A DNA stretch of 64,000 nt from Blepharisma stoltei ATCC 30299 (GCA_965603825.1 CBFDEM010000055.1:310001-374000), one strand, 5' to 3'. Counted from the stretch's first letter, positions 12,661 through 15,037 are shown. The notes: a model not told the origin generated them from the sequence alone. Numbers and translations are program-made.

Positions 12661-12912
12661 TTTTCTTATTTATGCTTGATCACCAATATTTTTTTGATAG
12701 CATCCTACTCTGAGATGTTGATTCAATACAAGCAATTCATTATTGAATTCAAAGATTCAAAAATTGAAAATTGAAAATGATTTAATATACAAGAAAAAAA
12801 TTGTTTTTAAATATTGTAAGACTCAAAATCTAATTTAATCTCCTCTTTAATGCTATCATAATAATTTCCGAAGAAATCAGCATAGCCAAGAATTCCAAAA
12901 TCTCATACTAAT

Positions 12913-14502
12913 ATGGAACCAATAAATTGCCCAATTTGCTTTCATGAATTTAACACAGAATCCTGCATCCCCCTCGTTCTCTATTGTGGTCATTCATTTT
13001 GCCAAAAATGCACCTCAACAATTGACCGAAGAATGGGTGCTCTCTACTGTCCTCTCTGCAGAAGTAAGGACTACCGAGAAGTATCTCAAATAAATAAAAA
13101 TTATGCATTATCTAAGCTTCAGCCAGACACCAAATATTATTGTTCTACACATCCAGACAGAGACGCTCTATATTTTTGTCTCACTGATGATTCAATTTTA
13201 TGCTGTCGATGTGTGACTTTGCATAAAATGCATGATTTTTATGATATAAATGACCCAATAATTATTAATCAAGCTGATGAAAATTTTAAATTAATAAGAA
13301 AAAGAGCTGAAAATGAGCTTAACCAGGCCCAAACAGAAAGACAAGAATCAGTCAGGATTTTTGATGACTTAAAAAAGAAAAAAGATATTGCATTGGATGA
13401 AATCCATTATTATTTTGACACTATAGTAGACGCATTAAATCATAAAAAGCAGGATTTTGAAAAGAGTCTTAATGGCCCTTATAATAAGATTTTGAAAAGA
13501 ATTCAGAAAAAAATAGAAGAGTGTGATGACATGATAAGTGCAAAATTTAATATTTTGAGAGATATTGAACAATTAAATAAAAAAAGAAAATATTGAAATG
13601 GGATTAAAATGTTAAATGAGACAAAAAATTTTAATTTAGATAATACTGAGCTTTCAGTGGTAGAAAATATTAAAAATATTGAAGAAGATTATGTGAAATT
13701 GAGCTATCAAACAGAAATTGATATAAATTGTATATTAGAGTCTATCAAAAATATAAATCCTAACGAAAAAGAGTCAGAAGAATTAATCAATTGATCTCCA
13801 GCACCAGTGAAGAAAATAGAAGAAGTAATCAGCAGTTCTGGACAAGCAAAATTAATTGATAAATTATCAGGTCAAGGCTTTATAAAAAGCAGCAAAGTAA
13901 AATCAATTTTAAAAGCAGTTGATAGAAAAGACTTTATCCCATCAGAAAATCCAGCTTATGATGACCATCCTCAGAAAATAGGTTTTAATACCACAATTTC
14001 AGCTCCGCATATTCATGCAATATCATTAGAGCTCCTTGAAAAATGGCTGATACCAGGGGCAAGTGTTCTAGATATAGGCTGCGGTAGTGGTTATTTGACT
14101 ATATGCTTCGCAAAAATGATTGAAAAAGGGAAAGTATTTGGCATAGATCATATTGAAGAAATTTTAAATCAAGCCGTTGAGAATTCTAATAAATCGAATT
14201 ATTATTTAAATCAATCACCTGAGCTAGAGGTGAAATTTGCGAAAAGAGATGGAAAATCAGGCTTAATAGAGTTTGCGCCATATAACGTAATTCATATTGG
14301 GGCTGCTACAACTGAAATTCCTGAAGAATTAATTAGGCAGCTTGCTCCAGGAGGGGCTTTACTAGCTCCTGTTGGCCCATTAACCGGTGCTCAGCGTATT
14401 ACTTTATTAACTAAAAGCCTAGATTCAAGTTTAGACATCAAATCATTAACAACTGTGAATTACGCCCCGCTTACAGATCGAGAAAAGCAATGTCCACTTT
14501 AG
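12913..14502 (+). CDS. RING-B-box-coiled-coil (TRIM-like) protein fused to protein-L-isoaspartate O-methyltransferase (529 aa)
   Basis: ORFs 12913, 13609 and 13807 share one frame, separated only by TGA (13594, 13792). RING CPIC...CGHSFCQKC...CPLCR; B-box CSTH...FCLTD...CCRC...HKMH; PIMT TISAPHIH, LDIGCGSG, GIDH, APYNVIHIGAA, LAPGG, YAPLTDREKQ. Confidence 0.88.
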
Positions 14503-14572
14503 CAGTTTAAAGTTAAAACTTGCTTCATTTACTTATAATTAATTTTAAAGACTAAGTTTTTAAAGTCAAGGC

Positions 14573-15037
14573 TTAAAATAATTTCTTTGGCTGTCTAGGA
14601 ATTTTGTCAAGACTTTCCTTGATTTTTTGCATTCTTGCCGCAAACTCATAGTCCTTGAACGATTCATCAGTGACATGCATATCTGAAACTCTTCCTGCCT
14701 TGAAGAACAACTCTCTGAAGCACTCTTCGTCACTGATTTTATGTGAATATCCTCTTATAATTTCATTAATCGAATAAGGCTGTCTGCAGCTCTTAACCAA
14801 ATCATAGTGAGCATGCGGAGGACCATCATAAATAATCTGAATATATCGGCCAATCTGATGTCTAGTTTCATTCTTTTTAAGAGTTTTCCCCATAATTCGA
14901 TCACCTAAGTTTTGAACGTCACGAAACTTCATGTGAGGATACTTTTCAAGCATATTTTCTATGATGGTCTTGATTGCGACAACTGTATTTTGTGCTGGAC
15001 CTGCTCTTGCTATTAAAATTGCCTGATAGATTGGCAT
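14573..15037 (-). CDS. Mitochondrial ribosomal protein bS6m-like
   Basis: MPIYQAILIAR...NLGDRIMGKTLKK...GRY pattern of the S6 family. Confidence 0.7.
   Translation of the reverse strand: MPIYQAILIARAGPAQNTVVAIKTIIENMLEKYPHMKFRDVQNLGDRIMGKTLKKNETRHQIGRYIQIIYDGPPHAHYDLVKSCRQPYSINEIIRGYSHKISDEECFRELFFKAGRVSDMHVTDESFKDYEFAARMQKIKESLDKIPRQPKKLF

What the first reader, a model, noticed from the sequence alone, without database searches (positions are those of the whole stretch)
12913..14502. TRIM-like E3 ligase fused to an intact L-isoaspartyl methyltransferase: candidate repair-or-destroy system for age-damaged proteins
Seen: with UGA=Trp, three track ORFs form one 529-aa frame comprising RING, B-box, coiled coil and a complete PIMT domain. 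The PIMT part has no ATG of its own (the track start is GTG) and there is no intergenic spacer. It keeps the isoAsp-binding TISAPH motif, the SAM motifs (LDIGCGSG, GIDH) and the C-terminal Y.PLTD motif. Known: in TRIM/RBCC proteins the domain after the coiled coil usually selects substrates, and PIMT recognises isoAsp residues. Animal PCMTD1 links a PIMT-like domain to a Cullin5 ligase via a SOCS box. Inference: this is an independently evolved single-chain ligase that could methylate and/or ubiquitinate isoAsp-damaged proteins. I do not know of a described RBCC-PIMT fusion.
Basis: partly seen in the sequence, partly recalled or inferred. Interest (0 to 1): 0.85.

Follow-up and report, generated by a model that had tools for sequence, protein, structure and literature searches.

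The report
Ciliate TRIM-like ligase fused to PIMT
A ciliate (Blepharisma stoltei) gene encodes one 529-residue protein that joins a TRIM-type ubiquitin-ligase module to an apparently active repair enzyme for age-damaged (isoaspartyl) proteins; it belongs to a conserved, undescribed protein family and is a single-chain counterpart of the animal PCMTD1-Cullin5 ligase.

Summary
Window 12913-14502 (+) is one 529-codon gene with in-frame TGA at codons 228 and 294. The genome is the Blepharisma stoltei ATCC 30299 macronucleus, where UGA encodes Trp.

Pfam finds RING, B-box and a full PCMT domain. A predicted 113-residue helix lies between them. A profile of the N-terminal part matches solved TRIM28, TRIM72 and TRIM21 tripartite motifs.

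A paralog on another contig (47% identical) has the same layout in one ORF without any TGA, and has TGG-Trp where the window has TGA-294. Stentor and Fabrea, which use the standard code, and more than 40 unnamed public proteins share the architecture. One of these lies on a contig with a trichostome-type telomere.

All RING and B-box zinc ligands and the PIMT catalytic and AdoMet motifs are invariant or nearly so down to 25% identity. The Thr that inactive PCMTD1 replaced by His is probably retained (position inferred). Assembled contigs of four runs, probably RNA, cross both TGA codons without joints.

The ubiquitin-ligase activity on isoAsp-damaged proteins is inferred, not shown. I found no paper describing the fusion, but it is neither unique to this genome nor absent from databases. 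I class it as a new variant of a known kind.

The scan's index holds only this same first-stage note for this stretch, none on other DNA.

The parts
12869..14531 (+). Extent of assembled contigs (probably RNA) over the gene; about 32-44 nt before the ATG and 12-29 nt after the stop
   Evidence: contigs of four runs begin at 12869-12881 and end at 14514-14531. Depth is zero or near zero in the flanking intergenic bins. No joints.
12913..14502 (+). Coding sequence: 529 codons plus TAG stop (UGA read as Trp)
   Evidence: Identical to the public protein P0010.
12928..13059 (+). C3HC4 RING finger, residues 6-49 (C6 C9 C25 H27 C30 C33 C46 C49)
   Evidence: four RING models at or above cut-off. Ligands invariant in 26 relatives. 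I8, P47 and a basic residue at 50 conserved.
13141..13233 (+). B-box (type-2-like) zinc finger, residues 77-107 (C77 H80 C89 C97 C100 H104 H107)
   Evidence: PF00643, 25.1 bits, cut-off 24.1. Ligands invariant. Aligned with the TRIM28 B-box2.
13255..13593 (+). Long coiled-coil helix, residues 115-227
   Evidence: AlphaFold2 models, helices 115-185 and 187-227, pLDDT about 85-95. The profile alignment to the TRIM28 RBCC runs to position 221.
13594..13596 (+). In-frame TGA, codon 228 (Trp). Relatives of the heterotrich type have I/V/M/L/T here
   Evidence: Unchanged in contigs that cross it.
13600..13749 (+). Three shorter helices (residues 230-279) after the long helix, followed by a linker to the PIMT domain
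13792..13794 (+). In-frame TGA, codon 294 (Trp). The own paralog and three close homologs have Trp at this column
13846..14487 (+). Protein-L-isoaspartyl O-methyltransferase (PCMT) domain, residues 312-525
   Evidence: 3e-64. (human PCMT1 5.5e-53). (TM 0.93 and rmsd 2.0 A to 1i1n).
13990..14010 (+). Pre-motif I TTISAPH (isoAsp pocket), with T361 and S363
   Evidence: T361 in 30 of 30, S363 in 29 of 30.
14068..14091 (+). AdoMet motif I, LDIGCGSG
   Evidence: D387, G389, G391, G393 invariant.
14140..14151 (+). GIDH, with the acidic residue that binds the AdoMet ribose
   Evidence: D412 and H413 in 30 of 30.
14461..14478 (+). Post-motif III, YAPLTD
   Evidence: Y517 in 29 of 30; the following residues vary in the distant subclade.

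Best explanation
Shown: the locus is one expressed gene of Blepharisma stoltei. It encodes a 529-residue protein in which a TRIM-type tripartite motif (C3HC4 RING, type-2-like B-box, a helix of about 110 residues plus shorter helices) is followed by a complete protein-L-isoaspartyl O-methyltransferase domain. It is a member of a conserved ciliate family.

Inferred mechanism:
- As in TRIM ligases, the RING recruits a ubiquitin-charged E2.
- The B-box and coiled coil make an elongated dimer that presents the C-terminal domains.
- The C-terminal domain chooses the substrate. Here it is a PIMT domain, which binds polypeptides with L-isoaspartyl residues in an AdoMet-dependent way.
- The protein would therefore ubiquitinate age-damaged proteins.
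- Because the catalytic pocket is kept (it is like PCMT1, not like inactive PCMTD1), it probably also methylates them. Repair and disposal would then be coupled in one chain.

It works like animal PCMTD1-CRL5 but is built differently and is not its homolog.
For: Gene model:
- One frame with only two TGA codons.
- The genome is B. stoltei: 41.46 Mb in 64 contigs, with CCCTAACA telomeres. Its UGA is read as Trp (PMC9942806; preprint 10.1101/2023.10.09.561518).
- The paralog at L002 1483-3087(-) is an uninterrupted 534-aa ORF with the same layout, 47% identical, with Trp at the column of TGA-294.
- Contigs 12879-14069 and 12881-13817 cross both TGA codons, with no joint and no base change there.
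- There is no in-frame ATG ahead of the PIMT core.

Family:
- The Stentor protein OMJ77209.1, a Fabrea transcript and more than 40 unnamed proteins have RING/B-box plus PCMT.
- Their PIMT domains lie on one side of a branch, apart from ordinary PIMTs and from this genome's own stand-alone PIMT (SH-aLRT 88).

Modules kept:
- All 8 RING ligands, 7 B-box ligands, T361/S363/A364/P365, DxGxGxG and D412/H413 are invariant or nearly so over 26-30 sequences at 25-59% identity.
- RING residues I8 and P47 and a Lys/Arg after the last Cys are conserved. By general knowledge of RING E3s, these are the E2-contact and 'linchpin' positions.

TRIM likeness:
- The RBCC profile hits the TRIM28 RBCC at 8.6e-22 over positions 10-221, and also TRIM72, TRIM3 and TRIM21.
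- The ten Foldseek hits at E <= 0.001, and most further hits, are TRIM structures.

PIMT likeness: 5.5e-53 and 45% identity to human PCMT1, TM 0.93.

Substrate-selector logic within this genome: at least 40 RBCC-like loci, some with a Kelch propeller in the C-terminal position.

Precedent: PCMTD1 binds isoAsp proteins and feeds a Cullin5 ligase (PMC12590147).
Against: - No biochemical or genetic datum exists for any member.
- E3 activity, dimerisation, isoAsp binding and methylation are all inferred from sequence and predicted structure.
- The sequencing runs are only guessed to be RNA, and a contig does not prove a single transcript.
- The AlphaFold models are monomers with low pTM (0.43-0.48), so the geometry between RING and PIMT is unknown.
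- An intact active site could equally mean that the protein is simply a repair enzyme with an added scaffold.
- Which Thr of PCMT1 is replaced by His in PCMTD1 is not numbered in the text I read. Equating it with T361 is my inference.
Confidence: 0.6

Rival explanations
1. It is mainly a repair methyltransferase. The RBCC part serves only to oligomerise, localise or regulate the enzyme, for example by self-ubiquitination that controls its level or by anchoring it to a cortical or ciliary structure. It does not ubiquitinate the damaged substrates.
For: The PIMT active site is fully conserved and PCMT1-like. Some RBCC-like proteins of alveolates are structural: Toxoplasma pre-conoid ring proteins appear among the fold hits. 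The genome also keeps a separate stand-alone PIMT, so the fused copies could be a localised isoform.
Against: The RING zinc ligands and the E2-contact and linchpin positions are conserved over the whole family. That is not expected if the RING were only a structural spacer. RBCC paralogs with a Kelch domain in the same position fit a substrate-receptor role.
Confidence: 0.22
2. The PIMT domain has been re-used for something other than damaged-protein recognition. It might methylate a specific partner (for example a component of the ubiquitin machinery), or act as an AdoMet sensor that gates the ligase.
For: PCMTD1 needs AdoMet to engage substrate, so cofactor gating has a precedent. Post-motif III varies in the distant subclade (P519 and T521 are not conserved).
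Against: The isoAsp pocket residues of pre-motif I are invariant or nearly so (T361 in all 30 sequences; S363/A364 in at least 90%), and the domain is 45% identical to human PCMT1 with TM 0.93. Nothing points to a changed specificity.
Confidence: 0.1
3. Two or three separate genes or products: TGA-228 ends a RING/B-box protein and the PIMT part is made on its own. Alternatively the locus is a decaying pseudogene.
For: Under the standard code the frame is cut into three ORFs. In vitro, a Blepharisma eRF1 can weakly recognise UGA.
Against: UGA is read as Trp in this species. Both TGA codons lie 235 codons or more before the stop, far outside the zone near stops where UGA is depleted. There is no ATG ahead of the PIMT core. 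The paralog and the standard-code relatives are uninterrupted. TGA-294 aligns with Trp. Contigs cross both codons. Functional residues are intact.
Confidence: 0.02

Closest known systems
Human PCMTD1 (and PCMTD2), substrate receptor of a Cullin5-RING ligase (PMC12590147)
   Same: A PIMT-fold domain that recognises L-isoaspartyl proteins is physically coupled to ubiquitin-ligase machinery, giving a disposal route beside repair.
   Different: PCMTD1 uses a C-terminal SOCS box to recruit ElonginBC-CUL5-RBX2, and it is catalytically dead (Thr to His in the AdoMet-substrate channel). [quoted passage not shown] It keeps what I take to be the corresponding Thr (position inferred). It is much closer to PCMT1 (45% identity, TM 0.93) than to PCMTD1 (25%, TM 0.65).
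Metazoan TRIM/RBCC E3 ligases (TRIM28, TRIM72, TRIM21, TRIM32)
   Same: The order RING, B-box2, long coiled coil, then a variable C-terminal domain. Profile and fold searches return TRIMs as the best matches.
   Different: It comes from a ciliate. An enzyme of the PIMT family as C-terminal domain is not among the described TRIM classes. Sardiello et al. 2008 (PMC2533329) held the tripartite motif to be exclusive to metazoans. Common descent versus convergent assembly was not resolved here.
TRIMCyp (TRIM5-cyclophilin A fusions of owl monkey and macaques)
   Same: An RBCC module with an enzyme domain recruited as the target-binding C-terminal domain. A TRIM5/CypA chimera appeared among the PDB hits. 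The biology is from my own knowledge.
   Different: TRIMCyp is a recent retrotransposition in primates aimed at viral capsids. The ciliate family is old and aimed, by inference, at damaged cellular proteins.
Canonical PCMT1/PIMT repair methyltransferase
   Same: Full-length PF01135 domain with all AdoMet and isoAsp motifs and the same fold.
   Different: PCMT1 is a stand-alone enzyme of about 230 residues. B. stoltei has one of those as well (L001, 236 aa), which sits elsewhere in the tree.
Stentor coeruleus OMJ77209.1 (SteCoe_23244), 'hypothetical protein'
   Same: An ortholog-level relative, 535 aa, with RING + B-box + PCMT.
   Different: It is encoded with the standard code in one ORF. It is annotated only automatically and has no published study that I could find.

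Membership tests
TRIM / RBCC (tripartite motif) E3 ligases | N-terminal C3HC4 RING with eight zinc ligands | tested here: met
   (zf-RING_UBOX 34 bits, zf-C3HC4 27.3 bits, both over cut-off). C6 C9 C25 H27 C30 C33 C46 C49 are invariant.
TRIM / RBCC (tripartite motif) E3 ligases | B-box zinc finger directly after the RING | tested here: met
   PF00643 at 25.1 bits, cut-off 24.1. Seven ligands are invariant. Aligned with the TRIM28 B-box2.
TRIM / RBCC (tripartite motif) E3 ligases | Long coiled coil after the B-box, in the order R-B-CC | tested here: met
   Predicted helix 115-227 plus three short helices. The profile match to the TRIM28 RBCC spans positions 10-221 at 8.6e-22. Fold hits are to the KAP1 tripartite motif, TRIM72 and the TRIM5 B-box/coiled coil.
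TRIM / RBCC (tripartite motif) E3 ligases | Antiparallel coiled-coil dimer | not testable with these tools
   Only monomer predictions were available (pTM 0.43-0.48).
TRIM / RBCC (tripartite motif) E3 ligases | E2-dependent ubiquitin-ligase activity | not testable with these tools
   Only indirect support: I8, P47 and K/R50 are conserved in 26-27 of 30 sequences.
TRIM / RBCC (tripartite motif) E3 ligases | Common descent with the metazoan TRIM family | not tested
   No RBCC phylogeny was made. The literature (PMC2533329) treats the motif as metazoan-specific.
Protein-L-isoaspartyl O-methyltransferase (PCMT, PF01135) | Full-length match to the family model above its cut-off | tested here: met
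   217.1 bits against a cut-off of 20.3, profile positions 4-210 of 210.
Protein-L-isoaspartyl O-methyltransferase (PCMT, PF01135) | AdoMet motifs (DxGxGxG and the acidic residue after strand 2) and pre-motif I TISAPH with its Ser | tested here: met
   Aligned residue by residue with human PCMT1. Invariant or near-invariant in the family.
Protein-L-isoaspartyl O-methyltransferase (PCMT, PF01135) | PIMT fold | tested here: met
   Model against 1i1n: TM 0.93 (normalised by target), rmsd 2.0 A, 45% identity.
Protein-L-isoaspartyl O-methyltransferase (PCMT, PF01135) | Methyl transfer to isoAsp substrates | not testable with these tools
   Needs an enzyme assay.
PCMTD1/PCMTD2 (PIMT-domain CRL5 receptors) | C-terminal SOCS box (BC box and Cul5 box) | tested here: not met
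   No SOCS-box hit in Pfam. The protein ends four residues after the PCMT match.
PCMTD1/PCMTD2 (PIMT-domain CRL5 receptors) | Inactivating Thr-to-His change in the AdoMet-substrate channel | tested here: not met
   T361 of TISAP is kept in 30 of 30 family members. The paper is PMC12590147. That this is the residue meant is my inference.

The most novel reading that the evidence does not exclude
Ciliates have an old, self-contained 'repair-or-destroy' enzyme: an active isoaspartyl methyltransferase that is itself the substrate receptor of a TRIM-type ligase. A spontaneous chemical lesion would then serve directly as a degron, and methylation and ubiquitination would compete on the same bound substrate. 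If true, three things follow.
- It is a convergent counterpart of animal PCMTD1-CRL5.
- It shows that the tripartite motif with exchangeable C-terminal receptors (PIMT, Kelch) is not a metazoan invention.
- With the other RING-, B-box- and BTB/Kelch-PIMT architectures seen in public proteins, it suggests that linking isoAsp recognition to ubiquitination is a recurrent solution in eukaryotes.
Probability: 0.4. Interest if true: 0.8.

Novelty: new variant of a known kind. Interest (0 to 1): 0.62.

Why it matters
IsoAsp formation is a major spontaneous form of protein ageing. Until the recent PCMTD1 work, the only known answer to it was repair by PIMT.

A single polypeptide that carries both an apparently active PIMT and its own RING ligase would be a compact system of about 61 kDa, easy to handle in the laboratory. 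It could be used to ask how a cell decides between repairing and degrading a damaged protein, without having to rebuild a five-subunit Cullin complex.

Stentor and Blepharisma are giant, long-lived single cells in which RNAi by feeding is said to be available (from memory, not checked here), so the question may be testable in vivo.

The finding also bears on the origin of TRIM ligases. The same genome holds dozens of RBCC genes with different C-terminal domains.

Tried and rejected
- Separate genes, a TGA stop, or a pseudogene: rejected (see rival 3).
- Introns that would remove the TGA codons: none. The contigs show no joints and the paralog alignment has no gap at those codons.
- Membership in PCMTD1/2: rejected. 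There is no SOCS box, the Thr is kept, and similarity is low.
- Independent origins of the various E3-PIMT architectures: I could not show this. An AU test does not reject one clade for all of them (p 0.30).
- The 'careful' tree did not finish in 477 s. The quick PMSF tree was used, and the RBCC-PIMT split has only SH-aLRT 88.
- Taxon names for most relatives could not be obtained. The look-up of encoding contigs gave no DNA for P0047 and P0273. An assembly accession (GCA_041447055.1) is cited in no held paper.
- No named Tetrahymena, Paramecium or Oxytricha member appeared in three word-indexed searches. This is weak evidence of absence only.
- The ESM Atlas gave one lead: a cluster of 145 members with PCMT and B-box, taxa not recorded.
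- The runs found are only guessed to be RNA. The laid stretch holds no intron that could settle it.
- Two literature searches for RBCC/B-box plus isoaspartyl found nothing relevant. One search call failed on a term that was too short.
- Whole-length work used the public protein P0010, the uninterrupted paralog, and in-script translation with the organism's own code.

Full report
**1. What is in the sequence**

Window 12913-14502 (+) is one reading frame of 529 sense codons ending in TAG. It is broken under the standard code only by TGA at 13594-13596 (codon 228) and 13792-13794 (codon 294).

- Piece 1 gives a C3HC4 RING (residues 6-50) and a B-box (76-109), both over Pfam's cut-offs.
- Piece 2 gives nothing significant.
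- Piece 3 gives a PCMT domain covering profile positions 4-210 of 210 (3e-64).

After TGA-294 the first Met is residue 402, behind pre-motif I and motif I. The methyltransferase core therefore has no ATG start of its own.

**2. The genetic code and the organism**

Reading TGA as sense raises the summed length of ORFs of 150 aa or more in the window from 10,759 to 18,544 residues.

The assembly has 41.46 Mb in 64 contigs, and its contig ends carry CCCTAACA repeats. This matches the published Blepharisma stoltei ATCC 30299 macronuclear genome: 41 Mbp, 64 telomere-to-telomere sequences, CCCTAACA telomeres, and UGA reassigned to tryptophan (PMC9942806).

A later preprint states that Blepharisma reads UGA unambiguously as Trp. 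It also reports that UGA is depleted only in the last 25-30 codons before real stops (10.1101/2023.10.09.561518). The two TGA codons here lie 301 and 235 codons before the stop.

There is also internal evidence for the code. The genome's stand-alone PIMT (L001) 'ends' at a TGA that falls on the conserved Trp of the C-terminal KQW motif of PIMTs. The human motif is from my own knowledge, because the chain alignment stops at KQ. With TGA read as Trp the frame runs on for five more codons.

**3. The fusion is real**

A search of the same genome with the PCMT model found a second locus on another contig (L002 1483-3087, minus strand). It is one uninterrupted 534-codon ORF without any TGA, and it has the same RING, B-box, helical region and PIMT domain. 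It is 47% identical over the full length.
- At the column of TGA-294, this paralog and three close homologs have Trp.
- At the column of TGA-228, relatives of the heterotrich type have I/V/M/L or T.

The public protein collection already holds the identical 529-residue product with Trp at both places (P0010).

Contigs of four public runs from one study cover 12869-14531.
- Single contigs span 12879-14069 and 12881-13817.
- These run from before the ATG, across both TGA codons, into the PIMT domain, with no joints and no base differences at the TGA codons.
- The runs are only guessed to be RNA. Three things point to RNA: the contigs stop at the gene's ends in all four runs, the intergenic bins are empty, and the neighbouring gene has about ten times the depth.
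- This is supporting evidence, not proof of a single transcript.

**4. A conserved family**

Word-indexed and exhaustive searches with the paralog, with a distant member and with a family profile found more than 40 proteins of about 500-720 residues carrying RING and/or B-box plus PCMT. Only two have names:
- Stentor coeruleus OMJ77209.1, annotated 'hypothetical protein SteCoe_23244'. Pfam confirms RING + B-box + PCMT.
- A Fabrea salina transcript.

Both species use the standard code, so in them the fusion is a plain ORF.

A 666-residue member lies on a metagenome contig that ends in (GGGGATT)n. This is the CCCCAAT telomere reported for rumen ciliates. The family therefore reaches beyond heterotrichs. 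The ESM Atlas has a 145-member cluster with PCMT and B-box.

In a quick maximum-likelihood tree of PIMT domains (LG+C20 PMSF), all RBCC-linked domains lie on one side of a branch.
- They are joined there by four short rows that are probably fragments.
- On the other side are ordinary PIMTs and this genome's own stand-alone enzyme.
- Support is moderate (SH-aLRT 88). The heterotrich-type subclade has 100 and the core of the distant subclade 96.
- The careful search did not finish.

**5. Both halves are under constraint**

I compared 26-30 full-length members at 25-59% identity. These residues are invariant or nearly so:
- the eight RING ligands;
- seven B-box ligands;
- T360/T361/S363/A364/P365 of pre-motif I;
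- D387/G389/G391/G393 of motif I;
- D412/H413, and H461/G463.

In the RING, Ile/Val at position 8, Pro47 and Lys/Arg at position 50 are kept in 26-27 of 30 sequences. By general knowledge of RING E3s, these are the E2-contact and 'linchpin' positions.

The PIMT domain matches human PCMT1 at 5.5e-53. The AlphaFold2 model has mean pLDDT 84. It superposes on 1i1n with TM 0.93, rmsd 2.0 A and 45% identity, against TM 0.65 and 25% for PCMTD1 (9oma).

**6. The N-terminal half is TRIM-like**

A profile of the family's first 300 or so residues hits the solved TRIM28/KAP1 RBCC at 8.6e-22 over positions 10-221. It also hits TRIM72, TRIM3, TRIM21, TRIM32 and TRIM2.

The model shows a 113-residue helix (115-227) followed by three short helices. 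Its best fold matches are the KAP1 tripartite motif, TRIM21, TRIM72 and the TRIM5 B-box/coiled coil. TM scores are low, as expected for elongated flexible models.

[quoted passage not shown] At least two of them carry a Kelch propeller in the C-terminal position. In this organism, then, the RBCC is a reusable module with exchangeable C-terminal domains. That is the logic on which the functional inference rests.

**7. How it most likely works**

Shown: one gene, one frame, a conserved family, and intact functional residues in all modules.

Inferred:
- The RING recruits E2~Ub.
- The B-box and coiled coil form a TRIM-like dimer.
- The PIMT domain binds isoAsp-bearing polypeptides with AdoMet.
- Bound substrates are ubiquitinated. 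Because the active site is PCMT1-like, they can also be methylated.

The precedent is human PCMTD1. It binds isoAsp proteins in an AdoMet-dependent way and is the receptor of a Cullin5 ligase. It has lost methyl transfer through a Thr-to-His change, among other differences (PMC12590147). The ciliate family keeps what I take to be the corresponding Thr; the position is my inference.

I give this reading 0.6. The main rival (0.22) is a repair enzyme whose RBCC only scaffolds, localises or regulates it.

**8. Comparison and novelty**

- It is not a PCMTD homolog: no SOCS box, and a different position in the PIMT tree.
- It meets the sequence-level definition of an RBCC protein. Dimer geometry, activity and descent were not testable here.
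- Sardiello et al. 2008 concluded that the tripartite motif is exclusive to metazoans. These ciliate genes do not fit that statement, but I did not test common descent.
- Full-text searches found no paper that links B-box or RBCC with isoaspartyl methyltransferase.
- The proteins are already in public databases under automatic names, so the novelty lies in recognising and interpreting the architecture.
- Class: new variant of a known kind, namely an E3 ligase with a PIMT-type receptor.

**9. Limits**

- Most relatives are unnamed metagenome or Logan proteins.
- Absence from Tetrahymena, Paramecium and Oxytricha is only suggested.
- The RNA status of the runs is a guess.
- The tree is a quick one.
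- An AU test does not reject a single clade for all E3-linked PIMT domains (p 0.30). The other architectures (RING-coiled coil-PCMT, RING-Sina finger-PCMT, B-box-PCMT) therefore cannot be claimed as independent inventions on this evidence.

Noticed in passing
L002 1483-3087 (-) = G000 contig C60, about 546.5-548.1 kb: A second RING/B-box/coiled-coil/PIMT gene in the same genome: 534 aa, no TGA codon, 47% identical to the window's gene. A 97%-identical protein (P0001) exists in a JGI data set.
   Followed up: yes
L001 1492-2187 (-) = G000 contig C33: The stand-alone canonical PIMT of this genome. Its apparent TGA stop falls on the conserved Trp of the C-terminal KQW motif, and with UGA=Trp the product is 236 aa. 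In the tree it sits with ordinary PIMTs, away from the fused copies.
   Followed up: yes
G000, about 40 loci listed (e.g. L011-L020): A large expansion of TRIM-like RING/B-box/coiled-coil genes in B. stoltei. L011 and L013 carry a Kelch propeller after the RBCC (Pfam Kelch_1 7e-32 on L013 2242-3279). Others seem to have no further domain.
   Followed up: partly
Proteins P0175, P0080, P0104; P0114, P0074; P0040, P0095; P0026; P0313: Other ligase-type modules joined to a PCMT domain in public proteins:
- RING-coiled coil-PCMT.
- RING-Sina-type finger-PCMT.
- B-box-PCMT.
- A RING-less B-box-like finger (motif seen by eye; no Pfam hit) plus coiled coil with EEKKR repeats, then PCMT.
- A BTB + Kelch + PCMT protein named from the fungus Podila verticillata (possible CUL3-adaptor link; a gene-model merge is not excluded).
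A single origin of these was not rejected (AU p 0.30).
   Followed up: partly
L007 11100-11180: The metagenome contig that encodes the 666-aa family member P0073 ends in (GGGGATT)n followed by an Illumina adapter. This is the CCCCAAT telomere reported for rumen (trichostome) ciliates.
   Followed up: partly
window 14040-14115: Contigs of all four runs break or branch in the motif-I region. Three variants appear (14050 A>G, 14070 A>T, 14085 T>G), and there is one loose end at 14040. This is probably an allele or cross-assembly with another PIMT copy.
   Followed up: no
window 14573-15037 (-): The small downstream gene (154 aa) has about ten times the contig depth of its neighbours (86-115 against about 10). 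I did not identify it.
   Followed up: no
L004 1498-1866 (-) = G000 contig C44: A short, divergent PCMT-like ORF (73 bits to PF01135; open frame about 180 aa). It has a GxGxG motif but lacks the TISAPH motif in the listed ORF. It may be a degenerate or different methyltransferase.
   Followed up: no
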